This document shows positions 7,089-63,313 of a stretch of 64,000 bases of DNA, in pieces. Made by a program: the position numbers and the translations under genes. The notes beneath the pieces were generated by a model, which ran no database searches, was not told where the DNA came from, and saw nothing but the letters and a program-made list of their open reading frames with translations. The first letter of the stretch is position 1, and each line of letters opens with the position of its first letter. The stretch lies in IMG/VR virus record IMGVR_UViG_3300028045_000001, positions 124,001-188,000 of that record; one strand, given 5' to 3'.

Positions 7089-8546
7089 ATGCAGACTAAA
7101 GTATTCAATACGAATGCACAGTATAAGAGTGATCCGAATGCATCTAATCTGTTTACTGATTTAAATCTAGGGTCACATACAATAAGTGCAGTAGATCTAA
7201 TAGTAACCCTCTTTGGTCATAACAAAGAGGAGCTTGATTTCGAAGCCTCTTGCGTATGTGGTCACTTAGAAGGTAACTTCTTTACGGAACCGACTGAGTG
7301 TCCAAAATGTAAGAGTAAGGTAAAGACTCAATTTTGCGATGAGCTTAGCTTTAGAGGTTGGATAGATATAGAGGGTATATTGGGAACACCTGTACTACAT
7401 CCTGTTGCGTATAGTTGGCTAAGTGGTTGGATGGGTAATATTAAAAAGGTCCCAATCATAGACATGCTATTAGATGTTGATGCAGAATTACCAGAAGAAC
7501 TGTCTGAATTAAAACAAGGGTATAATTATTTTTATAATAACTTCTGGAAGATCATAGAATTTTTTGAAAATACGAAATCCAAAAGAAAGCCAGTATCTAT
7601 AAGGCCACATTTGAGTCTTCTTGGGGACGATGTATTCGTATCTAAATTACCGATTCTAAATGGGGCACTGCACATCATGACCCATTATGGAAAAATGCGA
7701 TTGGCGGACAATACAAGCAAGTCAATAGTATCGGCACTTACGGAATTATCAGATGTCGTGTATAAAAATTCTACTTCAATAGTTAAGGATTCATATATAG
7801 ATAGCAGACTATGGTCTATATATAAATTGTACCTGCAATATACCAAAGATGTAGCTAAAACAAAAATCTATCAGAAGGGGGGAATTAATAGAAAACACTT
7901 ATTGGGCGGGAGGCTCCATTTAACTTTTCGAGCAGTCATAACCCCTATAACAGTACAGCATTCCATGGACGAACTGCACCTCCCATGGAAGATAGGCGTC
8001 ACTGGGCTAAAGTTAGAGATTCTAAATATATTAACTAAACGCATGAAGTACTCTATGGAGGATGCGGTTAGAATACATGCCGAAGCTATAGTTTCTTATG
8101 ATCAACGGGTCTCGGATGCATTGGATATATTAATAGACGAATCTCCGTTTAGAACTATGACAGGCAAAAAGGGATTATTTGTACTATTTGGACGTAACCC
8201 AGTTTTACAGTACCTTTCAATAATGGCATTTGTTGTAACTACAATTAAGAAAGAAGTTAATGATGAAACTATTGGTGTTTCAACTACGGTGGCTAAGTAT
8301 CCGAACCTTGATTTCGATGGGGATGAATTGTTCGGATTGTTTATCAAAGAAGTTGACGAAGCACGGTTATTTGAAAATCTAAAACCATACAATGGGGTAG
8401 CAGATAAACAGAAGGGCGGCATAAGTGATATGTTGAGATCACCTCAACCGATAACTCATCACTTGAATGCATTCATTCGGTCTGACGTCTGCGATGCACG
8501 CTGGTTATCACTGCGCTCTGTGGAGACGGATGGGGTAAGTAAGTAG
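7089..8546 (+). CDS. non-virion RNA polymerase beta' N-terminal subunit (phiKZ gp55-like)
   Basis: Zn site CVCG...CPKC, GGRLHLTFRAVITP, GRNPVL, catalytic PNLDFDGDEL. Confidence 0.92.
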   Translation: MQTKVFNTNAQYKSDPNASNLFTDLNLGSHTISAVDLIVTLFGHNKEELDFEASCVCGHLEGNFFTEPTECPKCKSKVKTQFCDELSFRGWIDIEGILGTPVLHPVAYSWLSGWMGNIKKVPIIDMLLDVDAELPEELSELKQGYNYFYNNFWKIIEFFENTKSKRKPVSIRPHLSLLGDDVFVSKLPILNGALHIMTHYGKMRLADNTSKSIVSALTELSDVVYKNSTSIVKDSYIDSRLWSIYKLYLQYTKDVAKTKIYQKGGINRKHLLGGRLHLTFRAVITPITVQHSMDELHLPWKIGVTGLKLEILNILTKRMKYSMEDAVRIHAEAIVSYDQRVSDALDILIDESPFRTMTGKKGLFVLFGRNPVLQYLSIMAFVVTTIKKEVNDETIGVSTTVAKYPNLDFDGDELFGLFIKEVDEARLFENLKPYNGVADKQKGGISDMLRSPQPITHHLNAFIRSDVCDARWLSLRSVETDGVSK

Positions 8547-8576
8547 GTAACTATCGGATACCGATGGGTTGTATAC

Positions 8577-8945
8577 GTGATTAGATATATGTCTAATCAC
8601 GTATGCTGCGAATACTTACGTATTGAATTCAAACTGTCAAATGAACGATTGGGGGGCATGATGACAGCATTGTTATTTAATAGCATATTGAACGATGTAA
8701 TAGTCAATCTATTTATAGTGTACACACTATCAATGGCGGCGATAGCTATCAGAATAAGGATAATAAATAAGCTAATTGATAGGTATCCAATGCGGCTTGA
8801 GCGACATCTTGTATCAGACCTTAGTAGAGATCTGTTACTGCAGATTAAACTTGAGAAAATAAAATACTGTATCACTAAATCATTCTGTATAATTTCGGTA
8901 GTTCTTATAGCATTAAAACTTTATGTATTAAAACATCACCTGTGA
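8577..8945 (+). CDS. hypothetical membrane protein
   Basis: Two hydrophobic stretches (VIVNLFIVYTLSMAAIAI; FCIISVVLIAL); true start may be a downstream ATG. Confidence 0.5.
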   Translation: MIRYMSNHVCCEYLRIEFKLSNERLGGMMTALLFNSILNDVIVNLFIVYTLSMAAIAIRIRIINKLIDRYPMRLERHLVSDLSRDLLLQIKLEKIKYCITKSFCIISVVLIALKLYVLKHHL

Positions 8946-8996
8946 TAACTTCATTATCCGTAAACTTAGACGTAACTAAGGAGACATGGTATTAAA

Positions 8997-9284
8997 ATGC
9001 AATTATATGTAATGTTGATGTACCTATTGACTTGTGTCGCAACGGCATCTTTTATGATAGGCTACACTGTGTGGTTTTATAGAATCAGAACGTATATAGA
9101 GGGTAACTTATATTTCATCGCTTCAAATTATAACTTGCCGGAGCAAGAGCGAGCTATGTACGATAGGATGGTAGGGATAGGTAAGGAATTAAAAATATCA
9201 CAAAATAAGATAGATCTATACATGTTCCTTTTTATAGGCACCTATAATTTACATTACTGGCAATTGGGAATAAGTCTGTCTTGA
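8997..9284 (+). CDS. hypothetical membrane protein
   Basis: AAGGAG upstream; hydrophobic N- and C-terminal segments. Confidence 0.55.
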   Translation: MQLYVMLMYLLTCVATASFMIGYTVWFYRIRTYIEGNLYFIASNYNLPEQERAMYDRMVGIGKELKISQNKIDLYMFLFIGTYNLHYWQLGISLS

Positions 9285-9340
9285 TATTACTGCGCAATTG
9301 AAATGATTGCAAAATATAATTTTCATACAGTTTTTATTTA

Positions 9341-9355
9341 TATATTACCGTTATG
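9341..9355 (+). promoter_or_regulatory. early promoter
   Basis: TATATTAC-cgtt-ATG with upstream T-tract. Confidence 0.7.
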
Positions 9356-9385
9356 AAGTAATAGTATCAATCATAAGGGGGTGTA

Positions 9386-9883
9386 ATGTGGGTATCGCAC
9401 AATTGTCAAATATTAACATATGATCATAAATTAAATAAATGCAAAACATTTATTATAGATGATTTATATAACAAGGATAATTACCACGAAGTAATGATAC
9501 AGAGTGACAAAGGATGGGTCCAATTAGAAGAACTATTGTTCACTGGTTTAAAACTGTCCGTTGAAGCATCAACAATTAACGGCCACCGGATTACTATTCC
9601 AACCGATGGGTATTTGATAGATGCTGGATTTGATCCGATCTGCGCAAACAGAATGCGGGTCGGGTCACATGTAGTAATAGATAGCGGAAAATCTAATGGG
9701 TCGTTGTGCCAATCGTATGGGTTAGATGGAATTATATCAATCAAAAAACTGGGGTATATCCATACCTATTCGATCTGCATTGGGGGCATAACTCACGTAT
9801 CAATAAACGATTTTTTGATACCGTCTATGTCCATTGAAGTTAGAGATCTGTACAATATTGGCATGTATCAAATAATAGAATAA
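9386..9883 (+). CDS. standalone Hint (intein-like) domain protein, catalytic residues degenerate
   Basis: VSHNCQILT (block A-like), GWVQLEELLFTGLK..VEAST.NGHRITIP (block B-like), RMRVGSHV, IISIKKLG..HTYSICIGGITHVSINDFLI (blocks F/G-like); no N-terminal Cys/Ser, no TxxH, no terminal HN. Confidence 0.55.
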   Translation: MWVSHNCQILTYDHKLNKCKTFIIDDLYNKDNYHEVMIQSDKGWVQLEELLFTGLKLSVEASTINGHRITIPTDGYLIDAGFDPICANRMRVGSHVVIDSGKSNGSLCQSYGLDGIISIKKLGYIHTYSICIGGITHVSINDFLIPSMSIEVRDLYNIGMYQIIE

Positions 9884-10017
9884 GCACAGGTAGGAGTATG
9901 ATCCAAGTAAGGTAATTTTAATTACTACGCGTACATAAATGCATTATATTTATTGGGGGGTTTAGGTATCCAAATTAAAAAATAGGATGGTTGTACATTA
10001 TATGCGGATCCTAAGGA

Positions 10018-12321
10018 ATGAGAAACGTTAATGTAATTTTAAACAGAGGGAAGGTTGTCAAAATGAGGGATAACTACTACGAAGAAACTTTTAATGCGAA
10101 TATGATTGAATTGGAGAGGAGCGGGGATGGGAATGTCAAAGCTATACGAAACATTTTCAAGGTCATGCACGAAAAAATAATAGCTCTGGAGCGCCGGCCA
10201 CACGTGGAGACGTTAACTGCAACTGCTTGCTCAGATACGGCGGAAATAAATAAACGAGTTAGTAAGATAGAAGAGAGTACCTATGAAATACATGAAAAAT
10301 TAAATGACATATCCTCTGTACTAATCGAGCATTGCAATAAGCCTGAGGCCACTATCAGCGAGGAGGTCATAAATCAACAGACCACGGCTATCTTAGATAG
10401 AATAAACCAGAATGATTCCGAAATAATGCCAGGTTACCTTAAACAAATATCTGATTTAGTGTACGAGAGTTTTACAGTGATTTCAAATGAAATGAAACAA
10501 ACCAATCTTGCCACAATTGAGGTCATGTTAGACGCAGCGAAAGTTAGAATACCTCCGGAAACAATGACCATAGTTGATAAAAGATTAAAAGACCTTGCGG
10601 ACGCTGTCGCAAACATGTCCGGAGTATCAGATATGCTAAGGAAGGATAACTACGATTCACAGGCGCACCTCTCGCGTGTATTTTCAGAATTTACTAAGCG
10701 GTTATCCGAGGTCATTTGCAGTATACCAACGCAGGATACCGCAGCAGTCGAACTTGGAAGTGTGGTCGCTACTGAAGATAGTCGCAATGATACCGTCTAT
10801 GAAGTAACACCTTCAAGTAACAATGGTGATGGGGAATACAATCACTCTGTAGATGAATTACTTGAAGATGCGGAAGAGATCCTCGAAGTAGACAATAGTC
10901 CCAATTTGGAAGATACTATTGTAGAAATGGAGGACGCGGATGATGTGGATATCGAGGAGAATGAAGAGATTGACGCAGAGCCGGAACCAGAAAGAGTTTA
11001 TGATAATTTAACGGACACCGAGACAGCTTCGCTTATTTCTGGAGATGTGGAGGATGTAGAGGATATACGCATAATGGAGGAACGAGCTTCGCTGCAGCAG
11101 ACAATCAATGGAATAGATCGAGACATACGCTCGGTGAAAAACAACCTTACTGATATTGTATTTGCTGTCGGGAAGTCGAGCGACCCCTCAGCTATTTTCT
11201 CATTTATGAGGGAGACATTCGGGTATAAGGACAAAATTACAGATGTGTTCAGGAAGGCCAATGAGGTGTTCGCTTTAGTGGTCGAGTATATGAAATCGGC
11301 TGATGCTACTGTATCAGAGAACGTTATCTTTAATAAGGCAGTAGATAGATTAAACAGCGATGCAAGGTCGCTCGTTGCAAAGTATAATGAAAGTTTGCGA
11401 ACATGCAACAAAGCGTTCTCTACCTACATGGACACACAATCTTACATCGGCCCAAATGAAGCCGCTAATGTATTGAGCGAGATCTGTGATGAAATTCAAA
11501 TCATTATAAATGAGAATAATAAACAAACTGGTAACATCGACAGTAAAAAGGATTATAAAAACTGTATAGCTCATATAGCTAAGAGCGCCAATAATTATTA
11601 TAACCAAGTGCGACTCGGACTAAAAGGTATATCCGATGAAGAATTGGAAAATTCCAATATAGTTGTCCCATTGGAATACTTCCAGTACATGTACAAATTT
11701 TTCGTATCAGAGGTACAGGATCCTGGAGCGAATGATGCATTCATAAATTACGATGACGCCACAGGAACGTTCATGTATTCGGATAGACTCCCAATAGCTT
11801 CATATGAAGATGAAGATGCACTATACCTAGAAATAGTAGAAAACTTCAGTAATCTTGATCTTGATGATTCACAGATTCCTGGACAATTGCAGGGGTTGAA
11901 AGATGTTAACGAAGATTGGTTTCGTGTGCAAACTTTTCGTACCTTTGCTGATGAACTTAAATTCTTTGAACCTGAGGAACTTAGACGAAAACTCGCTGCT
12001 TATTCTGATAATTCTCCTACAGAGATTGACCATTCTAATTTCATACGCATATACGATGTAGCGGCAACTAACCGTAATGAAAATAAACTTAGTTATGAGT
12101 TGATCCCTTTGTTACTTGGCGACAATGTTCAACATGAGATAATGACGATAGCATATAGAACATATACGGAGTACAAAGAAGTATTGAAGGAGTTTGGGAA
12201 AAGGTTTGCCGCTGCCGTCCATGTTGCCCAATCCCAGAATCTTGAAGTATTGGATGAAATAGGACTAAGGGAACTATTGGAAGGGGTTGAACAAGAAATC
12301 GATGATTGTTTGGAGGGATGA
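10018..12321 (+). CDS. large acidic, helical hypothetical protein
   Basis: 767-aa ORF with helical/coiled-coil character and a D/E-rich central linker. Confidence 0.75.
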   Translation: MRNVNVILNRGKVVKMRDNYYEETFNANMIELERSGDGNVKAIRNIFKVMHEKIIALERRPHVETLTATACSDTAEINKRVSKIEESTYEIHEKLNDISSVLIEHCNKPEATISEEVINQQTTAILDRINQNDSEIMPGYLKQISDLVYESFTVISNEMKQTNLATIEVMLDAAKVRIPPETMTIVDKRLKDLADAVANMSGVSDMLRKDNYDSQAHLSRVFSEFTKRLSEVICSIPTQDTAAVELGSVVATEDSRNDTVYEVTPSSNNGDGEYNHSVDELLEDAEEILEVDNSPNLEDTIVEMEDADDVDIEENEEIDAEPEPERVYDNLTDTETASLISGDVEDVEDIRIMEERASLQQTINGIDRDIRSVKNNLTDIVFAVGKSSDPSAIFSFMRETFGYKDKITDVFRKANEVFALVVEYMKSADATVSENVIFNKAVDRLNSDARSLVAKYNESLRTCNKAFSTYMDTQSYIGPNEAANVLSEICDEIQIIINENNKQTGNIDSKKDYKNCIAHIAKSANNYYNQVRLGLKGISDEELENSNIVVPLEYFQYMYKFFVSEVQDPGANDAFINYDDATGTFMYSDRLPIASYEDEDALYLEIVENFSNLDLDDSQIPGQLQGLKDVNEDWFRVQTFRTFADELKFFEPEELRRKLAAYSDNSPTEIDHSNFIRIYDVAATNRNENKLSYELIPLLLGDNVQHEIMTIAYRTYTEYKEVLKEFGKRFAAAVHVAQSQNLEVLDEIGLRELLEGVEQEIDDCLEG

Positions 12322-19397: not shown

Positions 19398-20507
19398 ATG
19401 AAAATATTACACATTAGTGACATACATATGGGACATCCCAGGGTCCATGCGTCCATCACTTACAATAGCTTAAGGACGCATGTGTACCCATTGTTGAGTG
19501 ATGTCGATGTTTTAATTATAGGAGGGGATACTGCGGACAGGGGATTGGCATTGGATTCCTCTCCTAGTAGGATCATAGTGCAATTTTTAATGGACTTGTG
19601 CGATCTAATTAAAAAATACAACTTCCTTCTTAGGATCGTACGGGGCACGTGGAGCCATGATCGCGACTCCGTAAGAATTATAAATACTATAGCTAAGTCT
19701 AAGCGAGTTTCCAATAAGGTTAAATACTTTGACACTATTGAAATAGAATATATAAAAAAATTCAATAGATCCTTTATGTATGTCCCAGACGATGTGCCAT
19801 TTGATGATCTTGAACATAGGATTATAAACAAAATAAAAGATACTAAGACAGGTAAAGTAGATGTGATGGTGTTCCATGGCGCGATGAAGCATGCGTTGCC
19901 ATATATGCCAAAAGTGCCAGTCAATACAGTTAATGCAGACAATTGGAATGGCTATATAAATGAGGTGTGCTGCTGTGGCCATATACATCAAAGAAGTGTT
20001 TATAAAAATAAATTTATTTTTTCAGGATCGTTTGATCGATCGTGTCACGGAGATGAGGGGGCCAAAGGTTGCTTTCTAATAGACTTAAAGGACGATGGTA
20101 CTCGTAGAATAAAATTTATAGAGAACCCAAGCGCTGTTATTTTTAAGACACTTGACTTTAACAATATAAGTATGTCCGATGGTATCGATCTTATAGCAGA
20201 AACAATAGCCAAATGTAGCGAAGATAGATTGGATGTCGATATCCCCACGTATATCCGCATTCTTGTTAACGACATGATCACAAAAGCGGCCCTGTTGGGT
20301 CATACATCAAAGGCGTATGGAACGGTCAAAAATATCAAGATATCGTATAAGTCCGACAATGCCGATATAGTGGTCGATGTAGAGGAAGATGAAGAGGAAT
20401 CTGTATTTATCGTGACCCCTGATAACCTACCTCAAATAATAGCGGAACGTATCAATCAAAAACTATCTGTAGAAAGGATATCTGAAATATTGGATTGTAG
20501 TGGTTGA
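19398..20507 (+). CDS. sbcD: SbcD/Mre11-like metallophosphoesterase nuclease (phiKZ gp65-like)
   Basis: ISDIHMG, IGGDTAD, VRGTWSHD, FHG, CGHIHQ, SGSFDR motifs. Confidence 0.9.
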   Translation: MKILHISDIHMGHPRVHASITYNSLRTHVYPLLSDVDVLIIGGDTADRGLALDSSPSRIIVQFLMDLCDLIKKYNFLLRIVRGTWSHDRDSVRIINTIAKSKRVSNKVKYFDTIEIEYIKKFNRSFMYVPDDVPFDDLEHRIINKIKDTKTGKVDVMVFHGAMKHALPYMPKVPVNTVNADNWNGYINEVCCCGHIHQRSVYKNKFIFSGSFDRSCHGDEGAKGCFLIDLKDDGTRRIKFIENPSAVIFKTLDFNNISMSDGIDLIAETIAKCSEDRLDVDIPTYIRILVNDMITKAALLGHTSKAYGTVKNIKISYKSDNADIVVDVEEDEEESVFIVTPDNLPQIIAERINQKLSVERISEILDCSG

Positions 20508-20583
20508 TGTAAGAGCGAGTTCACATGGATAGGTGGGAGACCACCTATCCATGTGTAAGTTGGCCTAAGTCTATATATCGTGG

Positions 20584-20686
20584 TTCAATTAGTTTCACTT
20601 ATATATTACTATAACGAATAGGATAAGTTATATCGCCTGATTCATCGAAGTAGGTGCGACATTGGCTTGGCTTCAGTCGGCAAGAG
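20584..20686 (+). repeat. early promoter plus conserved 5' leader, copy 1 of 3
   Basis: 20592-20657 is identical over 66 nt to 47608-47673; near-identical core at 46956-47028. Confidence 0.9.
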
Positions 20687-20726
20687 CAGAAGTATTTTTA
20701 AAACATTTAAAATAAGAGGTGCACTC

Positions 20727-21041
20727 ATGAAAACTTTCTTTTTAGGACTTTGGAATGTCGTTAAAGGGTTTATTTTTGGTGTTGTACTGGCCATCCCAGT
20801 TGCAGTTGCCGTGTATGTTATACTCCACTATAGCTTAGTGTGGAAGATAACTGCTGCTGTTCTATGTGGGCTTTATATATTCGTTGGTTCACGTATATAT
20901 TATTCTGTACATGCTCCAAATGAAGATGTGAGTAAATTAAAATCGCATTTAGACACTTTGAGCAAAGGAATGAATAGAGTAGAAGATTTGTTGGCCAAAG
21001 GTAAATCTGACCTAGATAAGTTTAGATCCGCTAACGCTTAA
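20727..21041 (+). CDS. small membrane protein, paralog of 47749..48075
   Basis: AAGAGG RBS; MKTFFLGL...P.A.A.Y...WKITAAVL...Y matches MKNFFKGL...P...A.Y...WKIVAAVL...Y. Confidence 0.75.
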   Translation: MKTFFLGLWNVVKGFIFGVVLAIPVAVAVYVILHYSLVWKITAAVLCGLYIFVGSRIYYSVHAPNEDVSKLKSHLDTLSKGMNRVEDLLAKGKSDLDKFRSANA

Positions 21042-21189
21042 TGAAATTAAAAAGTGAGGGTTTGAATATATGGCAATTTCGCCAAAGTAACATATAAAGC
21101 TACGTAGCTATATAATAACTTTTATTAGATCGCTCGGGCAATCACCCGAGCGATCATTTTAATAATAAGGATATCAAAAGATAGTTAAA

Positions 21190-23250
21190 CTATCTCCCTT
21201 TATATGCGAGGACAGACACCCTGCGGAATCCTTGAGCAATGAAGATATTGGAGTCACTATCTATGCACATTTTAATTTTTGTATATTCTGAGTCAGTGGT
21301 AGTAATAATATGATGACTCCCAGGAACAAGCTGCCATCCATTTGTTGGATTATACTTCCAAGTACGATGTTGTACACGATGTCCTGGATATTCAAACATT
21401 TGAGTATTGAGATAATGCTTTCCATCTGCCCCAGTCACATATTGGACCTTGTCATAGTTCATATTTAACACAGAATCTATATTGTTCATAAGGGGGGATA
21501 TAAGCCCAGCTGAATCTAGGAATACTAATTTATTAGTGGTAGCTTCATAATCATAAAAAACAACATACCTTGCTGAAGCAGGTTCATTGACAAAGAAGTT
21601 TGCAACATTTCCGGAGGGGCACACTGTTTCTACTTTATGCCAAGCTGCACTATAGAAGCTATACGTATATCCATGGAAGGAGTGCACATCTATCAGAGGT
21701 GATTGCAAGGGCGCAGCTCCAGTATGAATTCCGTGCTCATCCACAACAATTTTTGTTGTATTTATTTGGGGACCATTGTTGACTATGCGGCTATCGGTCC
21801 AAGTGGTTTCGGATTTAGCTTTACTATAGACCACATGAGGTGAATAAGTGTATACATACGTTGTGGGATCCTCACTATCTACAATGTAGAAGTCGGAATT
21901 ATAAAGAGCGAAATTTTTAAAATCAAGGCGTTCAAATAATTCAAACGTCCTTGAGGATTTTATATACTTATAAATTCGGTTTTCACTGGAGCCATTGTTC
22001 ATGTATTCGCCACAAAAAATATAGATTTCGTTGTTTACAGCCTTTGCTTTAAACTGATGCCCTCTGCCCCCTAGTGCAAGTTCGTTAGCTTCGTCCACAG
22101 CATATTCCCAAGTTGTTCCGTTAAAAACTTTAAGCATGAGCTTTCCATTGTCTCTCATCTGCATAAAGTATGGAGCATCATCTTTGAGCACGAACTCCAT
22201 GTAGTTGAGTGCCAGATCTTTATCACTAATGTTTGTTCCGATAGTACTCCAAGATTTTTCTGAGATTGTATCTTGGACAACTTGATATTGAAATGATGTC
22301 CCTCCTTCGCGCTCTCCCTCCCCAATGGATACAATGCAATCTACGTTATAATCTCCAACTGTAGAAGTGTCCAGCTCAAACACCTCCCCATTTCCAGAAT
22401 GTACGCCGTTGACATACCAATTGACTATAGGGTCGGTTAACTGGTGGATGTCAGTTACATTTATTTCTGCAACCTCACCGACATTAAAAACAGTCTTGTC
22501 TGTATTTAAGGAGAACACTACCTCATCGTTGAAATCCTCATTAAGTACAATGGTAAAATTTCCTGAATTAACACCGGACCCATCATACTCAATAGTGGCG
22601 CTGGATGATAGGTTGCTGGCGATCCTCAATGATTTAGTGAACCCGTACTGGTTATTTTTAAGAGTGGTTATTGTAGCATTGACTCTATAGAATCCGGGAG
22701 ACAATGTCGTATACACCAGGATCCTTCCTTGATCACTATCTACCTGAGGCACTATAGGTACTTCTTTTTGTGCACGGTCAAATAGCTTTATATCCACGAC
22801 CGCATCAGGAAAGTTGGCAGTATTCCAAATAAAGACTAGGTTAAACCTACCTAATCCATCACTTTGCACAATAGTGATTGAGGTACTATTTGTTACACCA
22901 ACATCAACAGTCACGTCCGCCTCGCCTGCTCCAATGATACTCCCATATGTATTTTTAGCAAAGACTTTAACATTATACACGCCGACTGAATAATTTGATG
23001 CTGTGTATGTATCAGTGGCTGAGATTAACACTTCCTCCTCTACGCCATCCGGATCAGTAATTTTTAACTGATATTTATGCGTCACAATTGGTTCATTTGG
23101 AACGATTGTTTTACTCAGAACCTTTGGTTCATCGAAACTCAGCACAAACGAACCAGTGTCTTCCTTTGTACCCGAGTCACTGTTAGATGAGCATCCAATG
23201 CAACCAAGCATAAGAAATAGAACAAACAACATTGCGATAAATTTTTTCAC
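21190..23250 (-). CDS. predicted lipoprotein with Ig/PKD-like domains and C-terminal beta-rich (propeller-like) region
   Basis: GAGGAG RBS before GTG at 23250; MKKFIAMLFVLFLMLGCIGC signal peptide with lipobox-like Cys followed by Ser-rich linker; VNWYVNG...GDYNVDCIV Ig-like strands. Confidence 0.7.
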   Translation of the reverse strand: MKKFIAMLFVLFLMLGCIGCSSNSDSGTKEDTGSFVLSFDEPKVLSKTIVPNEPIVTHKYQLKITDPDGVEEEVLISATDTYTASNYSVGVYNVKVFAKNTYGSIIGAGEADVTVDVGVTNSTSITIVQSDGLGRFNLVFIWNTANFPDAVVDIKLFDRAQKEVPIVPQVDSDQGRILVYTTLSPGFYRVNATITTLKNNQYGFTKSLRIASNLSSSATIEYDGSGVNSGNFTIVLNEDFNDEVVFSLNTDKTVFNVGEVAEINVTDIHQLTDPIVNWYVNGVHSGNGEVFELDTSTVGDYNVDCIVSIGEGEREGGTSFQYQVVQDTISEKSWSTIGTNISDKDLALNYMEFVLKDDAPYFMQMRDNGKLMLKVFNGTTWEYAVDEANELALGGRGHQFKAKAVNNEIYIFCGEYMNNGSSENRIYKYIKSSRTFELFERLDFKNFALYNSDFYIVDSEDPTTYVYTYSPHVVYSKAKSETTWTDSRIVNNGPQINTTKIVVDEHGIHTGAAPLQSPLIDVHSFHGYTYSFYSAAWHKVETVCPSGNVANFFVNEPASARYVVFYDYEATTNKLVFLDSAGLISPLMNNIDSVLNMNYDKVQYVTGADGKHYLNTQMFEYPGHRVQHRTWKYNPTNGWQLVPGSHHIITTTDSEYTKIKMCIDSDSNIFIAQGFRRVSVLAYKGR

Positions 23251-23467
23251 GTTACACTCCTCAATTAAAAAAGTTTTTGTTACGCCAACCAGACAGTGTC
23301 CCATACACATAAGCGGCCAGCCAATTAAAATATGATTTATAATATGGTTAAATGTATCAATTGTTTTTTTGTCTATCAGCACAATTTGTTTATATATAAC
23401 TGTATAGAATAGGAGAATCTCTACAATAAAAACAAACTATATAATTGTGAATAATATGGGGGCAGAG

Positions 23468-24998: not shown

Positions 24999-25034
24999 TG
25001 TGTCAAGGGAGACTCCGGAGTCTCCCTTGACACA
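24999..25034. terminator. perfect 36-bp palindrome, probable terminator
   Basis: TGTGTCAAGGGAGACTCC|GGAGTCTCCCTTGACACA directly before the next early promoter (25057). Confidence 0.7.
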
Positions 25035-25127
25035 AACTTCATTATTTTTTTATTTATATATTACTATTATGATGTAACACTTGACTTTTTAAGATCAGAG
25101 GGCGACTTAATTAAAAGGAGAAGTATC

Positions 25128-27377
25128 ATGAAAAAAGAAACTTCCCACTTTGTAACAAAGTGGGCAGGTAAACAGATCAAACTACCATTAGATCCAGATG
25201 GAGTGTATGACTTCACAGTAGATTGGGGAGATGGCGCGATTGACCAGATAGCTGTACACGATCAAAGTGAAACGATGCACACTTACAAAGACAAACAAAA
25301 GTCCCATACCGTAACTATATCTGGCACCATAGAAGGGTTTGGATTTTACAAGGATCTCGAAGCAATTAACGGAGGATTGCTCGATGTACTTCAATGGGGA
25401 AATGTTAAGTTACATAACAAGGGGTATCAGTTTGCAGAGTGTAAGAAATTAAAGGGGTTTAGTGCCAAAGATGTTCTATATTTATCTAACGTAACTCATA
25501 TGGGGTGTATGTTCTATGAAGCCATATCCTTCAATCAGGACTTATCCAATTGGGATGTAAGTAGTGTTATTGATATGAACGGCATGTTCTGCGGAGCTAT
25601 GTCATTCAATCAGGACATCTCCACATGGGATGTGAGTAATGTTACCCGTATGTATGGCGTGTTCTTTAAGGCCACTTCTTTCAACCAAGACCTATCCAAG
25701 TGGGATGTTAGTAGTGTTATTAATATGGATGGCATGTTCAGTAAGGCTACATCCTTCAACCAAAGCATATCCACATGGGATGTGAGTAATGTTACCCGTA
25801 TGTATGGCATGTTCTCCGAGGCCGCATCTTTTAATCAGGACATATCCAAATGGGATGTGGGTAGTGTTACTGATATGCACGATATGTTTCTCAAAGCTTC
25901 ATCCTTCAATCAAGACATTTCCACATGGGATGTGAGTAATGTTACCAATATGGGCGCTATGCTCTCTACCGCTACTTCCTTCGACCAGGACATATCTAAC
26001 TGGGACGTAAGTAATGTAACTGATATGGAGCTGATGTTGGCGGGAGCTACATCCTTCAATCAAGACATTTCCACATGGGATGTGAGTAATGTTACTAATA
26101 TGAGCTATATGTTCGCTAACGCTTCATCCTTCAACCAAGATATCTCCACATGGGATGTGGGTAAGGTTGGTAACATGAAACAGATGTTCTCGGGAGCTTT
26201 GGTATTTAATAAGAATATCTCAGACTGGAATATCGGCAACGTCACTGATATGGAAGGCATGTTCAATAAAGCTTCTTCTTTCAACCAAGATATCTCCAAC
26301 TGGGATGTGGGTAAGGTTGGTAACATGAAACGTATGTTCTCTGAAGCCAAAGCTTTTAATCGAAATATCTCAGACTGGAATACCGGCAATGTTGAAGATA
26401 TGGCAGGTATGTTCTGGAGAGCCTTAGCTTTTAACCAAGGCATACCTAACTGGGATGTAAGTAGTGTTACCGATATGGAGCAGATGTTTGCAGGTGCTTC
26501 ATCCTTCAATCAAGATATATCAAAGTGGGATGTCCGTAGTGTTATTAATATAGATGAGATGTTCCAGGAAGCTACCTGTTTCAACCAAGACATATCCAAA
26601 TGGGATGTTAGTAGTGTTACTGGTATGGAGCATATGTTCTATAATGCCGCATCATTCAACCAAGATATATCCAACTGGGACGTTAGTAATGTTACTACTA
26701 TGGCTGGCATGTTTACAGGTGCTTCATCCTTCAACCAAGATATATCTAAATGGGATGTGAGTAGTGTTACTAATATGAGGCTTATGTTCGGCGAGGCTAC
26801 ATCCTTCAACCAAGACTTATCTAATTGGGACGTTAGCAGTGTCACCGATACAGCTGGGATGTTTCTCAAAGCTTCCTCCTTCAACCAAGATATATCTAAA
26901 TGGGATGTGGGTAGTGTTACTAATATGGAACAGATGTTCTGTTACGCCATAGTCTTCAATCAAGACATATCCAACTGGGATGTGAGTAATGTTGCAAATA
27001 TGATGCATATGTTCACACATGCCATGTTCTTCAACCAAGATATATCCAAATGGGATGTAAGCAGTGTTACTAATATGAGAGGTGTGTTCATTGGTACTTT
27101 GTTCTTCGATCAAGATATCTCTAAATGGGATGTAAGCAGTGTTACTGATATGCAGGGTACGTTCTGGGAAGCTACATCGTTTAACCAAGATATATCCACA
27201 TGGGACGTAAGTAATGTAACTGATATGAAGAATATGTTCGCTAAAGCCACATCCTTCAATCAAGACTTATCTAACTGGAATGTCGACAGTGTTACTAATA
27301 TGAAGAGTATGTTCGCTGGAGCCACATCCTTCGATCAAGACATATCCAAATGGGACATCAGTAATGACGATCGATAA
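25128..27377 (+). CDS. DUF285/BspA-type repeat protein, 25 x 25-aa repeats
   Basis: N-terminal FVTKW..KLPL....YDFTVDWGDG domain, then FNQDISxWDVSxVTxMxxMFxxAxS repeats; AAGGAG RBS; early promoter at 25057; no signal peptide. Confidence 0.9.
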   Translation: MKKETSHFVTKWAGKQIKLPLDPDGVYDFTVDWGDGAIDQIAVHDQSETMHTYKDKQKSHTVTISGTIEGFGFYKDLEAINGGLLDVLQWGNVKLHNKGYQFAECKKLKGFSAKDVLYLSNVTHMGCMFYEAISFNQDLSNWDVSSVIDMNGMFCGAMSFNQDISTWDVSNVTRMYGVFFKATSFNQDLSKWDVSSVINMDGMFSKATSFNQSISTWDVSNVTRMYGMFSEAASFNQDISKWDVGSVTDMHDMFLKASSFNQDISTWDVSNVTNMGAMLSTATSFDQDISNWDVSNVTDMELMLAGATSFNQDISTWDVSNVTNMSYMFANASSFNQDISTWDVGKVGNMKQMFSGALVFNKNISDWNIGNVTDMEGMFNKASSFNQDISNWDVGKVGNMKRMFSEAKAFNRNISDWNTGNVEDMAGMFWRALAFNQGIPNWDVSSVTDMEQMFAGASSFNQDISKWDVRSVINIDEMFQEATCFNQDISKWDVSSVTGMEHMFYNAASFNQDISNWDVSNVTTMAGMFTGASSFNQDISKWDVSSVTNMRLMFGEATSFNQDLSNWDVSSVTDTAGMFLKASSFNQDISKWDVGSVTNMEQMFCYAIVFNQDISNWDVSNVANMMHMFTHAMFFNQDISKWDVSSVTNMRGVFIGTLFFDQDISKWDVSSVTDMQGTFWEATSFNQDISTWDVSNVTDMKNMFAKATSFNQDLSNWNVDSVTNMKSMFAGATSFDQDISKWDISNDDR
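25490..27362 (+). repeat. 75-bp coding tandem repeat array
   Basis: 25 countable F[ND]xx[IL]xxW units at a 75-nt period. Confidence 0.9.
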
Positions 27378-27459
27378 TTATCACTTATATATTACATACA
27401 TGAGTAGGCACTTGTTATTAATTTAATTGTATTAACTTTTAACTAATGGAGGATTAACC

Positions 27460-27636
27460 ATGGCCGAGTCACAAGAAAAATCAAAAGAACAAAAAACTCT
27501 CATAAGAGGGGCGGAGAGTGTAGTTCCTGTTAATGGAGAAATCAAATTTGATAAGGAGGAGTCTCTTAAAAAGATAGAAAAAACAACTAACGACATGATC
27601 GAATCTTTTAATAAGTACAAACGAGCAGAAAATTAA
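27460..27636 (+). CDS. small hypothetical protein (58 aa)
   Basis: GGAGG RBS; early promoter TCGAT-N12-TATATTAC at 27371-27395. Confidence 0.6.
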   Translation: MAESQEKSKEQKTLIRGAESVVPVNGEIKFDKEESLKKIEKTTNDMIESFNKYKRAEN

Positions 27637-27657: not shown

Positions 27658-28107
27658 TTGCACCTCAAAATAAACTTCAAAAAAGACAATCGACTACGCA
27701 AACTGATAAAGGATTATGACAAGGAAGAAACTCTAAGTCGATCCACTGAATACAGCGAACTTTACACCACAGGTCTTATAAGAGAAACTTATAAGTACGA
27801 ATGTGGCAACGAAAAGTTCAGTGTTAGGTTGACATCTATCGGCAGTCTTAATGATAGGACCCCAACTGGATTCAAGGCACATCAATGCACTGTTGTGGTA
27901 ACTGATAAATATAACGCCATAAGCAATGATGTTCTTATGACGGCATTGGTCGTCGCCCTTTATGGGTACCAAACAGAAGAACTTAGAGTTGACAATACTG
28001 TCATCGAACACATAACAGATGTGTTTGATTACATTAAGCAAACATTTCGCTCTCTTAGAAAACACAGAGTCGAACTTGAAAGTGGCTTCGTTGTATTCAT
28101 AAGGTAA
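27658..28107 (+). CDS. hypothetical protein
   Basis: TTG start after AAGGA; followed by hairpin near 28138. Confidence 0.55.
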   Translation: MHLKINFKKDNRLRKLIKDYDKEETLSRSTEYSELYTTGLIRETYKYECGNEKFSVRLTSIGSLNDRTPTGFKAHQCTVVVTDKYNAISNDVLMTALVVALYGYQTEELRVDNTVIEHITDVFDYIKQTFRSLRKHRVELESGFVVFIR

Positions 28108-28223
28108 GTTTATGTCGTAAAAGGTCTTACGCATATAGCCACAGTGGGGATCATTCCCCACTGTGGCGTAAGATTACTATAATTTAAAAATGGCTTTCAA
28201 TTTTTTTTTCTTTAGGAGGGGGC

Positions 28224-28568
28224 CTAAGGGAACTTAAAAACAACGACTTTTAATCCATGTGATTTCGCTATATCTATCATGTGAGAAGTTCCCTTGCTTT
28301 CCCCATCCCATAGAGCGATAAGTGCTTCAGCTACTTTAGCCATCTCCACATTTCGTTTGTACCCTGCAGAGTTACCGTACTTGTCCCAATCAGCTGGGTA
28401 CTTTTCAATGGGAACTCTATTTTTAAAAGCCCACTGTTCGCCCAGTCTATCGGCCCCTCTTGCGGTGCCACTTATTACTGTAGTGGGGACCCAAGGAAGT
28501 TGTTGCAGAGCAGCTAATAAATGTTGTGGGTCATCACATGTCCTACTCCCAGCAATTATTGTTCTCAT
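28224..28568 (-). CDS. SLOG superfamily protein (DUF2493/YspA-like)
   Basis: IIAGSR...VISGTARGADRLGEQWA...PADWDKYG.SAG..RN.EM...ALWDGESKGT.HMI signature. Confidence 0.88.
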   Translation of the reverse strand: MRTIIAGSRTCDDPQHLLAALQQLPWVPTTVISGTARGADRLGEQWAFKNRVPIEKYPADWDKYGNSAGYKRNVEMAKVAEALIALWDGESKGTSHMIDIAKSHGLKVVVFKFP

Positions 28569-28696
28569 GTTTCATTCTCCATAGTGTATGTTTATATGAT
28601 GCACCTATTGCTTTTTTTATTTATATATTACTATCATGGTGTAAGAGACACCATTGTCTTAATTTTTAATAACTGAAAATAAAGGGTACAGAAATT

Positions 28697-29848
28697 ATGG
28701 AATCTGGACAATTATTTGTAACCGAGTGGCGTGGACATATGATAGTGTTACCGTTGAGTAAAAATGGAACATATGATTTTGTAGTAGATTGGGGAGATGG
28801 TACAACTATAAGTATAACGGAGTATAATCAGTCAGAAATCACGCATGCCTATAAGGACTCAAAGTTATTTCACATAGTAACTATATCCGGAATTATAGAA
28901 GGGTTTGGATTTGGATTTAATGGGGGAATTGGACCACAAGAATGTGAGTTGGTGGACGTTATTCAGTGGGGAAATGTCAAATTGAATAACGATGGATATC
29001 AATTTAATAATTGTATTGGGTTAAAGGGATTTAGTGCTAAAGACAGTCTCGACCTATCTAACATTACCAATATGAGTTATATGTTCTATGGGTCTATATC
29101 ATTCAATCAAGATATTTCTAACTGGGATGTGAGCATGGTTACGAGAATGGATAGTATGTTCCACTACGCTGTCTCTTTCAACCAAGATATATCCAAGTGG
29201 GAAGTTGATAATGTCACTGACATGAGATGTATGTTCTACGAGGCCATAGCATTCAATCAAGATACCTCTATGTGGAATGTTAGTAGTGTTACCGATATGC
29301 AATATATGTTCTGTGAAGCTGCTGCCTTCAACCAAGATATATCAAAGTGGGATGTAAGTAAGGTGATTGATATGAATCATATGCTCAATGGCATTTTATC
29401 CTTCGACCAGGACATATCTGATTGGGACGTTAGTAGTGTGACTAATATGAGTTATATGTTCTCTGACACTCTACGCTTCAACCAAGACATCTCTAATTGG
29501 GATGTGAGTAATGTTACTAATATGATGGGCATGTTTGCTGGTGCGAGTTCTTACAACCAAGATATATCTAATTGGAATGTTAGTAATGTTGCTAATATGG
29601 GGTTTATGTTTTATGGAGCTTCGTCCTTCAACCAAGATATCTCCAAATGGAATGTAAGTAATGTTACCGATATGAGGCACATGTTCAATAATGCCACATC
29701 ATTCGATCAGGACATCTCCACATGGGATGTGAGTAAGGTTGCTGAAATGGAGCATATGTTTTATGGAATCGAATCACACAATATTCCAACATTAAAATGG
29801 AGTATCATTAAAGCTGATGCCAACACACGTCAATCGGAAAGAACATAG
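28697..29848 (+). CDS. second DUF285/BspA-type repeat protein (9-10 repeats)
   Basis: Same N-terminal FVTEW..LPL....YDFVVDWGDG domain and 25-aa repeats; early promoter at 28624. Confidence 0.9.
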   Translation: MESGQLFVTEWRGHMIVLPLSKNGTYDFVVDWGDGTTISITEYNQSEITHAYKDSKLFHIVTISGIIEGFGFGFNGGIGPQECELVDVIQWGNVKLNNDGYQFNNCIGLKGFSAKDSLDLSNITNMSYMFYGSISFNQDISNWDVSMVTRMDSMFHYAVSFNQDISKWEVDNVTDMRCMFYEAIAFNQDTSMWNVSSVTDMQYMFCEAAAFNQDISKWDVSKVIDMNHMLNGILSFDQDISDWDVSSVTNMSYMFSDTLRFNQDISNWDVSNVTNMMGMFAGASSYNQDISNWNVSNVANMGFMFYGASSFNQDISKWNVSNVTDMRHMFNNATSFDQDISTWDVSKVAEMEHMFYGIESHNIPTLKWSIIKADANTRQSERT

Positions 29849-30221: not shown

Positions 30222-30590
30222 TTATTTTTTATGTGTTCCCTCAACGCCACGGTTCTTCCGATCCGATGTTCTGTGATTCAGCCAATGTAGGGCTTCCTCT
30301 AACTTTGTAATAGCCAAAGCGTTCTCTCTGCATTTAAAATCACTTGCTTGGAAACACATCAGCCTATCTACCACGATTGCTATCAAATCCTCAAGGTGAC
30401 AACCATTGATGCCATATTCCTTGATTGGCCCATTTTGAAACTTGACCTGACAAAATTCATTGGCTTCTGGATCTGTAGTATCAGTCTCACTACGCACGAC
30501 TCTATATTTATCACATGCGTTGTCCTGTCCGGGCTCAGCTAAAGCTTGTATTTCTGTAAATCGCGTTGTTCCAATTCCGAGTATTCTCAT
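30222..30590 (-). CDS. Acb2/Tad1-like helical-hairpin domain protein (candidate immune-signal sponge)
   Basis: FQNGPIKE.GINGC..EDLIAIVVDRL..FQ...F.CRENALAITKLEEALHWL..RT.DR..RGVEGT signature; AAGGAG RBS. Confidence 0.7.
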   Translation of the reverse strand: MRILGIGTTRFTEIQALAEPGQDNACDKYRVVRSETDTTDPEANEFCQVKFQNGPIKEYGINGCHLEDLIAIVVDRLMCFQASDFKCRENALAITKLEEALHWLNHRTSDRKNRGVEGTHKK

Positions 30591-62774: not shown

Positions 62775-63008
62775 ATGGATAGTTCATACAACGATGGATT
62801 CAAAGCTGGAGTTTTAAATGGAAGGGAACAAGTGCTTGAAAACATGAGAGAGATCGCCGCCACAATTGATGTCTGTAGGGCTTCCTCAAACTACATAGAA
62901 AAACAATTACACATTGGGCATTCGACTATGTACGACATATATGAATATAAATCAAATCTATTGGATACCTTATTAAATAAAATAGATGGGATGATGGTGG
63001 ACGACTAA
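62775..63008 (+). CDS. hypothetical protein
   Basis: AGGA upstream; 77 aa. Confidence 0.5.
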   Translation: MDSSYNDGFKAGVLNGREQVLENMREIAATIDVCRASSNYIEKQLHIGHSTMYDIYEYKSNLLDTLLNKIDGMMVDD

Positions 63009-63121
63009 AATAGATGGGGGCAAGTGCCAAGTTATTGATTAGCGCTTATTAGATCTTTTCATTTATATATTACTACTATGTGTAAGGTATATGTATGTAG
63101 TTTTTAATATAGGAGAATAAT

Positions 63122-63313
63122 ATGGAAATATGTCAAGTCGATGGATGTAATAGAAAACACTATGTCAAGGGCCATTGTGAAAAACACAATAAAGAAATGC
63201 AGATATGCGGCAGGATACTCCCAGTTATAAAGTGTAAGTTCGAAGGATGCGATGAAGAGCGTTTTAAGGAGGGGTACTGTCATGGATGCTACATGCGGAT
63301 GTATAAACCATGA
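63122..63313 (+). CDS. two-finger C-x4-C-x9-C-x2-H/C zinc-finger protein
   Basis: CQVDGCNRKHYVKGHCEKH and CKFEGCDEERFKEGYCHGC; AGGAG RBS; early promoter at 63066. Confidence 0.75.
   Translation: MEICQVDGCNRKHYVKGHCEKHNKEMQICGRILPVIKCKFEGCDEERFKEGYCHGCYMRMYKP

What the first reader, a model, noticed from the sequence alone, without database searches (positions are those of the whole stretch)
25128..27377. 25-repeat DUF285/BspA-type solenoid with hypervariable positions, cytoplasmic and early
Seen: the scaffold FNQDISxWDVSxV is near-invariant, while the residues in xMxxMFxxAx vary in almost every repeat (GC/YE, NG/CG, YG/FK, HD/LK, EL/AG, KQ/SG, AG/WR, MH/TH, QG/WE...). Exact 150-bp-spaced duplications (38 nt at 25621 and 25771; about 30 nt at 26151 and 26301) show expansion in two-repeat units. 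There is no signal peptide, and the gene has its own early promoter. Known: this family is mainly described as bacterial surface proteins. Inference: a recombinationally diversified binding surface (VLR/ankyrin-like) that may target host defence or regulatory proteins inside the cell.
Basis: partly seen in the sequence, partly recalled or inferred. Interest (0 to 1): 0.72.

Follow-up and report, generated by a model that had tools for sequence, protein, structure and literature searches.

The report
Early phage DUF285 repeat protein
This gene of a 240-kb marine phiKZ-like jumbo phage encodes one signal-peptide-less module (cap plus 25 repeats) of the very large, already described DUF285/PARCEL "BspA-like" repeat family; its "hypervariable" positions are the ones that vary throughout that family, so it is an ordinary family member in a moderately unusual setting, an early-promoter, non-structural region.

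Summary
ORF 25128..27377 (749 aa) has a 129-residue beta-rich cap followed by 25 in-register 25-residue DUF285 repeats with no indels. Positions 1, 2, 4, 22 and 23 are highly variable. There are 31-39-nt exact duplicates at 150-nt lag, no signal peptide or TM segment, and a phiKZ-type early promoter (TATATATTAC) behind a terminator hairpin.

- The variability profile is the family's generic one: Spearman 0.91 against 4,813 repeats from 272 other proteins, same top-8 positions, and the amount of variability is typical.
- Silent sites between repeats are saturated. Variable sites evolve near neutrality (dN/dS about 0.9) and the scaffold at 0.02.
- I found no reverse transcriptase and no donor cassettes. 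Independent assemblies match at 100% where they overlap.
- So there is no sign of active, VLR-like diversification.

"Early and intracellular" fits the sequence and context: all five paralogs lie outside the structural modules, and bacterial homologues carry signal peptides before the same cap. Neither expression timing nor location was measured.

The anti-defence role is speculation. In other phages DUF285 arrays sit in giant or tail-module proteins, which keeps a virion-adhesin rival alive. Verdict: new member of a known kind, modest interest.

The parts
24999..25034 (+). Perfect 16-bp stem-loop followed by a T-rich tract. Probable terminator of the upstream unit; it isolates the target as its own transcription unit.
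   Evidence: RNA fold -29.3 kcal/mol, z -6.5, 0 of 200 shuffles as good; sequence read.
25043..25067 (+). phiKZ-type early promoter motif: T-rich tract plus TATATATTACTAT.
   Evidence: The 13-mer occurs 12 times exactly on the + strand of the 240-kb genome and 0 times on the - strand. With the T-rich filter there are 36 copies on + and 7 on -, and none in the structural zones. The core equals the published phiKZ early-promoter consensus TATATTAC (PMC7058600, Table 2).
25116..25120 (+). Shine-Dalgarno AGGAG, 7 nt before the ATG.
   Evidence: Sequence read.
25128..27377 (+). CDS, 749 aa: DUF285/PARCEL repeat protein with no signal peptide.
25128..25514 (+). N-terminal cap module (residues 1-129, motifs FVTKW...LPL...YDFTVDWGDG), beta-rich.
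   Evidence: AF2 strands at residues 8-89. 5,156 library proteins match at E<=1e-3, and the cap usually recurs several times in giant secreted proteins. In bacterial homologues it follows a signal peptide.
25515..27374 (+). Array of 25 x 25-residue repeats (the last one is truncated after its 20th residue).
25620..25808 (+). 39-nt exact duplicate pair at 150-nt lag (25620-25658 and 25770-25808).
26151..26331 (+). 31-nt exact duplicate pair at 150-nt lag (26151-26181 and 26301-26331). Repeats 9 and 11 are the most similar pair (88% nt).
26571..27353 (+). Block of about 10.5 repeats collinear with the array of paralogue E (genome 8250-10379) at 76% nt. This is the trace of an old block duplication.
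27386..27395 (+). Second TATATATTAC core directly after the stop codon, ahead of small ORFs 27460..27636 and 27658..28107.
28138..28167 (.). 13-bp G+C-rich hairpin between convergent genes. Probable end of the transcription unit.
   Evidence: whole stretch -44.6 kcal/mol, z -5.7.
28610..28634 (+). The same early promoter motif upstream of the paralogue.
28697..29848 (+). Paralogue, 383 aa: same cap (63% identical) plus about 9 repeats, no signal peptide.

Best explanation
The gene encodes one stand-alone module of the DUF285/PARCEL (BspA-like, 25-residue LRR-type) repeat family: a beta-rich cap plus 25 repeats that fold into one long, regular solenoid.

It is one of five paralogues in a complete 240-kb marine phiKZ-like jumbo phage that carries multisubunit RNA polymerases.

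Unlike its bacterial relatives, which are secreted, often giant, multi-module surface proteins, it starts exactly where their mature chain starts and has no export signal. It lies behind a phiKZ-type early promoter in a non-structural, promoter-dense cluster of small accessory genes.

The most likely working model has four steps.
1. It is transcribed at the onset of infection by the injected virion RNA polymerase (inferred from the promoter motif).
2. The protein stays inside the infected cell (inferred from the lack of any export signal).
3. It acts as a passive binding scaffold. The conserved hydrophobic and N/Q/D positions build the solenoid. The outward-facing, unconstrained residues of the contiguous segment 22-23-1-2-4 give each rung, and each paralogue, a different surface (inferred; exposure could not be computed).
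4. The ligand is a host component, so this would be a host-takeover, host-range or counter-defence accessory factor. This step is speculative.

The variability arose from ancient repeat and block duplication followed by near-neutral point substitution, not from an active diversification mechanism.
For: Family: PF03382 E=0; TIGR02167 in 20 stretches.

Fold: AF2 pLDDT 95.2, pTM 0.86. Foldseek gives LRR proteins at probability 1.0 and viral DUF285 proteins, including an unnamed 729-aa BFVD entry at TM 0.71-0.73.

Phage identity: the window is positions 124001-188000 of a 239,960-bp record with terminal repeats, rated 100% complete. It carries RNAP beta-subunit PHROGs. The best cultured relatives are phiKZ-like phages at 27% aa identity. 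It is present in seawater metagenomes.

No export signal in any of the five paralogues, while homologues carry a signal peptide or lipobox before the same cap.

Early promoter: the motif is strand-specific, precedes RNAP subunit genes, and is absent from the zones holding terminase, virion and tail genes. Its core equals the phiKZ early consensus.

All five paralogues lie in motif-rich, non-structural zones.

Purifying selection on the scaffold: dN/dS 0.02 at the scaffold against 0.92 at the variable sites.

Intracellular use of the module by viruses is plausible. BFVD matches include giant-virus DUF285 proteins labelled putative E3 ubiquitin ligase and protein-kinase-domain protein. I did not check the domain architecture of those entries.

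Neighbourhood: an Acb2/Tad1-hairpin protein and a SLOG protein within 3 kb.
Against: There are no transcript or protein data, so 'early' rests on a motif and on context.

The tools gave no access to model coordinates, so I could not compute whether the variable residues are solvent-exposed and line one face. Positions 1 and 4 are half hydrophobic or small and may be partly buried.

No partner is known and the host is unknown.

In several cultured phages DUF285 arrays lie in giant proteins next to baseplate or virion genes, or in tail-fibre clusters. Some database homologues have tail-fibre-like N-termini.

Near-neutral evolution of the variable sites is equally compatible with those sites having no binding role.

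No chimallin or PhuZ homologue was detected using the phiKZ proteins as queries, so the compartment layout of the infected cell is unknown.
Confidence: 0.45

Rival explanations
1. Virion-associated host-recognition protein. The solenoid would be an adhesin displayed on the particle (fibre, decoration or 'fibre cloud') and would bind a host surface structure. No signal peptide is needed because virions assemble in the cytoplasm.
For: OBP gp145 (1,713 aa) and Aeromonas phage D3_0120 (2,676 aa) carry DUF285 arrays and lie between a putative virion structural protein, a baseplate assembly protein and SbcC. In Citrobacter phage Tr1 a 351-aa Big_2+DUF285 protein follows a tail assembly protein. The cyanophage ACG-2014f copy lies near tail-collar genes. 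Some homologues have tail-fibre-like N-termini (P0033, P0004-7). In the chimallivirus Goslar, LRR/beta-helix domains are fused to DUF7941 virion-fibre modules (bioRxiv 10.64898/2026.04.21.720040). Two DUF285 proteins were found in AaV particles (PMC7507832).
Against: The target has only 7 residues before the cap, so there is no room for an anchoring or trimerisation module. It lies behind the early-promoter motif, which is absent from this phage's structural zones. The OBP gp145 locus has no OBP early motif, so the two architectures differ in context. All five paralogues lie outside the terminase, virion and tail regions.
Confidence: 0.2
2. Actively diversified (VLR-, DGR- or cassette-recombination-like) binding surface under an arms race.
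For: Four exact 31-39-nt duplicates at two-repeat lag, and a lag-2 identity excess. A block shared with paralogue E includes identical variable residues in one rung (NMEQMFCYAIVFNQ). There are five paralogues.
Against: The variability profile and its amount are generic for the family, secreted bacterial members included. pS between repeats is saturated and the closest paralogue block is only 76% identical. dN/dS is 0.9, not above 1. There is no RT. An independent ENA assembly is identical over 5,266 nt that include the first 4.7 repeats, and Logan contigs from three runs lay on the stretch with zero differences.
Confidence: 0.07
3. Largely passenger 'nomadic' PARCEL DNA: a horizontally acquired repeat element that propagated within the phage genome and has little specific function.
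For: PARCELs are described as mobilome-borne and horizontally spread (PMC2996958). The best homologues are from marine FCB-group bacteria. The variable sites evolve neutrally. Long antisense ORFs occur within the array, as reported for PARCELs.
Against: Scaffold dN/dS is 0.02 over 148 codons. All five copies are intact with no indels in 25 repeats. Each of the two window copies keeps its own promoter and RBS. The paralogues are closer to each other (51-71% in the cap) than to most database proteins (best hits 50-58% in the cap), which suggests long residence in the phage rather than recent capture.
Confidence: 0.1
4. The protein acts outside the cell after lysis, or through non-classical release. 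For example, it could coat host debris or receptors to prevent unproductive adsorption, or mimic host surface DUF285 proteins.
For: The family's known members are extracellular. The module equals the mature form of secreted homologues.
Against: An early promoter is an odd choice for a product needed at or after lysis. There is no direct evidence.
Confidence: 0.08

Closest known systems
DUF285 / PARCEL repeat proteins (Pfam PF03382, TIGR02167 'PARCEL repeat-containing surface protein'; Roske et al. [quoted passage not shown]
   Same: HMM matches far above cut-off. 25-residue tandem unit with conserved hydrophobic and variable hydrophilic positions, and an identical per-position variability profile. 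The same N-terminal cap. Antisense ORFs within the array.
   Different: No signal peptide, lipobox, TM segment, T9SS tail or accessory Ig/PKD/Fn3 domains. A single module rather than the usual several. Phage-encoded behind an early promoter. No detectable dyad symmetry in the coding DNA with the tool used.
Giant DUF285 proteins of cultured jumbo phages (Pseudomonas phage OBP gp145, Aeromonas phage D3_0120, Vibrio phage pir03 ORF200 'PARCEL', Klebsiella phage N1M2)
   Same: phiKZ-like phage lineage, the same repeat family, 33-41% identity over most of the array.
   Different: Those are 1,700-6,400-aa proteins, and OBP gp145 and D3_0120 lie next to virion or baseplate genes. The OBP gp145 locus has no early promoter motif. 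The target is 749 aa, is cap plus repeats only, and lies in an early accessory cluster.
DUF285 gene expansions of the giant virus AaV and other Megaviridae-type viruses
   Same: A multi-copy viral family of signal-less DUF285 solenoids. AF2/BFVD models superpose locally (rmsd 1-4.5 A over 290-655 columns).
   Different: Eukaryotic viruses. Some copies are packaged or labelled with other domain names. Expression is reported as low and constant rather than early (PMC5917014).
Canonical LRR binding proteins (TLRs, SHOC2, plant LRR-RKs, lamprey VLRs)
   Same: Solenoid built from short repeats, with a conserved core and variable surface positions. Foldseek probability 1.0.
   Different: Global TM only 0.13-0.23. 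No LxxLxLxxN consensus. No Pfam LRR or LRR_5 hit. No somatic or cassette diversification machinery.

Membership tests
DUF285 / PARCEL (PF03382, TIGR02167) | Profile match above the curated cut-off | tested here: met
   PF03382 1052 bits (cut-off 25), 9 stretches; TIGR02167 431 bits (cut-off 30), 20 stretches.
DUF285 / PARCEL (PF03382, TIGR02167) | Tandem 25-26-residue unit with conserved hydrophobic and variable hydrophilic positions | tested here: met
   25 units at exact 25-residue spacing. The entropy profile correlates with the family's at rho 0.91.
DUF285 / PARCEL (PF03382, TIGR02167) | Dyad symmetry (palindromy) of the repeat-coding DNA | tested here: inconclusive
   The repeat finder found no inverted repeat of 14 nt or more within 120 nt in 25500-27377. 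The original definition used statistical MEME palindromes of imperfect symmetry, which this tool would miss.
DUF285 / PARCEL (PF03382, TIGR02167) | [quoted passage not shown] | tested here: met
   Antisense ORFs of 134 aa (26105..26509) and 148 aa (26817..27263).
Bacterial 'surface protein' subclass of DUF285 (lipoprotein or secreted) | N-terminal signal peptide or lipobox, or a T9SS or other sorting domain | tested here: not met
   Maximum KD 12-mer 0.12 in the first 50 residues; no TM-like 19-mer; no further Pfam domain. Homologues do have them.
BspA/TpLRR-type LRR (Pfam LRR_5 PF13306) and canonical LRR | Profile match to the LRR families; LRR solenoid fold | tested here: inconclusive
   No PF13306 or other LRR Pfam hit. 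Foldseek gives LRR proteins at probability 1.0 but TM 0.13-0.23. No PDB sequence relative.
Diversity-generating (DGR) or cassette/VLR-like hypervariable genes | Reverse transcriptase plus template repeat, or near-identical donor cassettes; excess nonsynonymous change; allelic diversity in populations | tested here: not met
   No RVT_1 (the control genomes gave matches). The closest paralogue block is 76% nt. dN/dS is 0.9. Independent assemblies are identical.
phiKZ-like early genes (virion-RNAP regulon) | AT-rich early promoter with a TATATTAC core upstream; transcript present minutes after infection | tested here: inconclusive
   The motif part is met. Timing of transcription is not testable here, because no RNA run holds the sequence and the read-laying run was already used.
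Chimalliviridae (nucleus-forming jumbo phages) | Multisubunit virion and non-virion RNAPs; chimallin shell protein; PhuZ | tested here: inconclusive
   RNAP beta/beta' PHROGs are present. phiKZ gp54 and PhuZ used as queries find nothing in the genome, but a single-sequence search at about 27% identity is weak.
Anti-defence proteins | Demonstrated inhibition or binding of a defence component, or homology to a known inhibitor | not testable with these tools
   Only neighbourhood evidence: an Acb2/Tad1-hairpin gene at 30222..30590. The target itself has no such homology.

The most novel reading that the evidence does not exclude
Signal-less, single-module DUF285 solenoids could be a paralogous family of early-expressed intracellular host-targeting factors in marine phiKZ-like jumbo phages. 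They would be the phage counterpart of the ankyrin, LRR and DUF285 gene expansions of giant eukaryotic viruses. Each paralogue's variable stripe would bind a different host protein, for example a defence or regulatory component.
Probability: 0.2. Interest if true: 0.65.

Novelty: new member of a known kind. Interest (0 to 1): 0.3.

Why it matters
DUF285/PARCEL is one of the largest repeat families with no known function: more than 7,800 strong hits among the 8,000 candidates scored here. It has been treated as a family of bacterial surface proteins.

A phage that keeps five export-less copies under strong purifying selection, two of them behind their own early promoters, is a tractable case for asking what the solenoid binds. 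That question extends to whether viruses of both bacteria and eukaryotes reuse it inside cells.

For this scan, the main value is negative. The striking "hypervariability" is the family's normal signature, not evidence of a diversification system.

Tried and rejected
1. Close relatives for comparing repeat number.
- megablast against phages found nothing.
- IMG/VR scans with the protein and with the RNAP beta subunit found nothing.
- The exact protein is not in the 15-billion-protein collection, apart from a 248-aa contig-end fragment.
- The only other assemblies found are 100% identical.

2. Laying reads. Logan contigs break inside the array. The "variants" and "joints" have the phage's own depth, and the ones I traced match its paralogues, so they say nothing about polymorphism.

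3. DGR. No RT.

4. PARCEL palindromy. No inverted repeats found.

5. Solved structures. No sequence relative in the PDB.

6. Surface mapping of the variable residues. The AF2 model is confident, but its coordinates cannot be reached from the scripts. Exposure was therefore only inferred from residue chemistry and solenoid geometry.

7. Chimallin and PhuZ, using the phiKZ proteins as queries. No hit.

8. The OBP virion proteome paper (PMC3264338). Not held in the library.

9. DUF7941 anchor module. No match in the Pfam scans, and I could not confirm that the Pfam copy holds a model for it. The target has no N-terminal extension in any case.

10. Rfam and tRNA scans of the window. Nothing.
Full report
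WHAT IS THERE

The ORF at 25128..27377 (+) is real and encodes 749 aa. It matches Pfam DUF285 (PF03382, E=0, 9 stretches) and NCBIfam TIGR02167, now named "PARCEL repeat-containing surface protein" (20 stretches).

Tandem Repeats Finder reports a 75-nt period with 24.6 copies at 25519-27366. Anchoring on the invariant Trp gives 25 units at exactly 25-residue spacing and no indel.

Residues 1-129 form a separate beta-rich cap with the motifs FVTKW...LPL...YDFTVDWGDG.

Over the 24 full repeats:
- F6, W13 and V18 are invariant.
- A3, N7, Q8, S11, D14, V15, M21, M24 and F25 are nearly invariant.
- Positions 1, 2, 4, 22 and 23 carry 7-12 residue types each (2.5-3.4 bits).

Two more lie at the same 150-nt lag, 39 nt at 25900 and 33 nt at 26727. 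They are only slightly beyond what column-shuffled arrays give. In my run-length scan the longest run was 46 nt, against a mean of 25 and a maximum of 42. Lag-2 identity is 72.5% and other lags about 69%. The two-repeat super-period is therefore real but weak.

THE GENOME

The window is positions 124001-188000 of a 239,960-bp virus record with direct terminal repeats, rated 100% complete.

It encodes several phiKZ-type RNA-polymerase beta/beta' fragments, a DNA polymerase, SbcD, terminase, tail fibre and baseplate proteins.

Its RNAP subunit is only about 27% identical to those of cultured phiKZ-like phages. It has no near relative in the phage or IMG/VR collections. Three seawater metagenome runs hold it.

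phiKZ chimallin and PhuZ, used as queries, find nothing. At this distance that is not informative.

THE PROMOTER

Upstream of the target lie, in order:
- a perfect 16-bp hairpin at 24999-25034 (-29.3 kcal/mol, z -6.5);
- a T-rich tract;
- TATATATTACTAT at 25055-25067;
- an AGGAG ribosome-binding site;
- the ATG.

The same 35-nt motif precedes the paralogue at 28697.

Genome-wide, the 13-mer is found 12 times exactly on the + strand and never on the - strand. With a T-rich filter there are 36 + copies against 7 - copies. Most sit some 45-170 nt upstream of an ORF with a ribosome-binding site, including RNAP subunit genes.

The motif is absent from 72-103 kb and 188-225 kb. Those zones hold the terminase, virion structural proteins, tail fibre and tail proteins, and the large RNAP beta-subunit gene.

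The core equals the published phiKZ early-promoter consensus TATATTAC and resembles that of 201phi2-1 (PMC7058600, Table 2).

"Own early promoter" is thus well supported as a sequence inference. Nothing was measured.

Nine copies of the motif lie between 20.6 and 32.5 kb of the window, among small ORFans. That is the typical look of an early accessory region.

NO EXPORT SIGNAL

None of the five paralogues has a hydrophobic N-terminus or a TM-like segment.

Bacterial homologues that share the cap show a signal peptide or lipobox immediately before it. An example is MKHFYITLFFIVSFFTAGFAQ|NEFITTWQ. Many end in T9SS sorting domains or carry PKD, Fn3 or Ig domains.

The phage protein therefore equals one mature module with the export signal removed.

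An exhaustive profile-free search with the cap alone found 5,156 proteins. Most top hits are giant proteins of 1-5.6 thousand residues in which cap-plus-array modules recur: median 4 caps, up to 20.

IS THE VARIABILITY SPECIAL? NO.

I extracted 4,813 canonical repeats from 272 other family proteins and compared per-position entropy.
- Spearman rho is 0.91.
- The eight most variable positions are the same and in the same order: 1, 22, 23, 2, 4, 12, 20, 5.
- The target's mean entropy at the five "hyper" positions is 2.91 bits. The median among 104 other arrays of 20 or more repeats is 2.80, and 36% of them are at least as variable.

The 2010 PARCEL paper already describes the family as having "highly variable hydrophilic sequences" on a conserved amphipathic scaffold (PMC2996958).

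IS IT BEING DIVERSIFIED? NO SIGN OF IT.

- Synonymous differences among repeats are saturated: pS is 0.64 at scaffold codons and 0.68 at variable codons. pN/pS at the variable codons is about 0.9.
- The best paralogous comparison is target repeats about 14-24 against the collinear array of paralogue E, at 76% nt over 783 nt. It gives dN/dS of 0.92 at the five variable positions, 0.14 at intermediate positions and 0.02 at 148 scaffold codons.
- That means strong purifying selection on the fold and near-neutral drift at the variable sites. With dS near 1, positive selection cannot be excluded, but nothing requires it.
- There is no reverse transcriptase and no donor cassette closer than 76%.
- An independent ENA assembly is 100% identical over 5,266 nt that include the first 4.7 repeats. 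A second contig is identical over 8,130 nt around paralogue E.
- Logan contigs from three runs lie on the region with zero differences wherever they are unique. The apparent variants and joints have the phage's own depth, and the ones I traced match the paralogues.
- Contigs cannot show rare alleles, so this is absence of evidence at modest power.

STRUCTURE

With a 45-sequence alignment, AlphaFold2 gives pLDDT 95.2 and pTM 0.86: a beta-sandwich-like cap (strands between residues 8 and 89) followed by a regular solenoid with one beta-bridge per rung.

Foldseek against the PDB returns only LRR proteins (TLR13, TLR9, SHOC2, plant LRR receptors). Probability is 1.0 but TM is 0.13-0.23, so the rungs are similar and the curvature differs. 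No PDB chain is a sequence relative.

Against viral models, the best matches are DUF285 proteins of Aeromonas phage D3, Klebsiella phage N1M2, AaV and Megaviridae-type samples, plus an unnamed 729-aa entry at TM 0.71-0.73.

What can be said is inference.
- In a 25-residue-per-turn solenoid each repeat position forms a longitudinal stripe.
- The five variable positions lie within one 8-residue stretch (22, 23, [24, 25], 1, 2, [3], 4), interleaved with the core residues M21, M24, F25 and A3. They should therefore form one band about a third of the way round.
- Positions 2, 22 and 23 are hydrophilic or Gly, so exposed. Positions 1 and 4 are half hydrophobic or small, so possibly half-buried.

WHAT OTHER PHAGES DO WITH THE FAMILY

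tblastn finds DUF285 in 115 phage records, mostly jumbo phages and cyanophages.

Where I looked, the setting differs from ours.
- OBP gp145 (1,713 aa) and Aeromonas phage D3_0120 (2,676 aa) are giant proteins beside virion and baseplate genes.
- Vibrio phage pir03 has a 19-kb "PARCEL" ORF (PMC7765460).
- Citrobacter phage Tr1 has a Big_2+DUF285 protein after a tail assembly protein.
- The cyanophage copy lies near tail-collar genes.
- The 9.5-kb OBP gp145 locus contains no OBP early-promoter motif.
- A 2026 preprint on the chimallivirus Goslar proposes that LRR/beta-helix domains fused to DUF7941 modules form a host-recognition "fibre cloud".

This keeps a virion-adhesin rival alive. But the target has only 7 residues before the cap, it carries an early motif, and, like its four paralogues, it lies outside the structural zones.

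MOST LIKELY MECHANISM

An early-transcribed protein, retained in the cell, acting as a rigid binding scaffold whose ligand is a host component (confidence about 0.45 for the package).
- Shown: family, fold class, lack of export signal, promoter motif and its genomic distribution, purifying selection on the scaffold, and neutral-like variable sites.
- Inferred: timing, location, and exposure of the variable stripe.
- Speculative: the ligand, and any counter-defence role. The only hint is the neighbourhood, namely an Acb2/Tad1-hairpin protein at 30222..30590 and a YspA/SLOG protein at 28224..28568, both on the other strand.

VERDICT

The gene is a new member of a known, very large family in an unusual but not unprecedented viral setting. 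It is not a hypervariable or recombinationally diversified locus. Interest 0.3.

Noticed in passing
window 30222..30590 (-): 122-aa protein with an Acb2/Tad1 hairpin domain (PF24729, 29.1 bits against a cut-off of 27; phrog_2428 at 1e-35). Candidate cyclic-nucleotide sponge (anti-CBASS/Thoeris type), 2.8 kb from the target.
   Followed up: partly
window 28224..28568 (-): 114-aa YspA/cpYpsA-related SLOG-domain protein (PF10686, 3e-16; phrog_289), convergent with the target's transcription unit. SLOG domains bind nucleotide-derived ligands.
   Followed up: no
window 21190..23382 (-): 730-aa minus-strand ORF with a lipobox-like N-terminus (...FLMLGCIGCSS...) and weak Kelch/beta-propeller similarity, with no PHROG. 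Possibly a phage-encoded lipoprotein in an otherwise plus-strand early region.
   Followed up: no
window 20600, 46972, 47616 (+): Three copies of the early promoter followed by a conserved leader of about 75 nt (AACGAATAGGATAAGTTATATCGCCTGATTCATCG...), then small ORFs starting MK..FF. No Rfam match. Could be a repeated 5' leader or a small RNA.
   Followed up: partly
whole genome G000 (239,960 bp): T-rich tract plus TATATATTAC motif: 36 filtered copies on the + strand and 7 on the - strand. It is absent from 72-103 kb and 188-225 kb, where terminase, virion and tail genes lie. This looks like a clean candidate early regulon for a distant phiKZ-like marine phage.
   Followed up: partly
G000 8250..10379, 20181..21470, 62864..63955; window 28697..29848: Four further DUF285 paralogues, all without an export signal. 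One (8250..10379, 709 aa) has an extra N-terminal region of about 210 residues with no family match, placed before the cap.
   Followed up: partly
window 27386..27395 and 28138..28167: A second early-promoter core lies directly after the target's stop codon, ahead of ORFs of 58 and 149 aa. A strong hairpin between the convergent genes probably ends the unit.
   Followed up: partly
proteins P0156-P0299: The 129-residue cap is itself a repeated module. It occurs 3-20 times in giant secreted bacterial proteins (1,000-5,600 aa), each copy followed by its own DUF285 array. This modular 'cap+array' architecture does not seem to be captured by the Pfam model.
   Followed up: partly
window 26105..26509 (-) and 26817..27263 (-): Long antisense ORFs (134 and 148 aa) inside the repeat array. 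This is a known by-product of PARCEL coding sequence and not evidence of genes.
   Followed up: no
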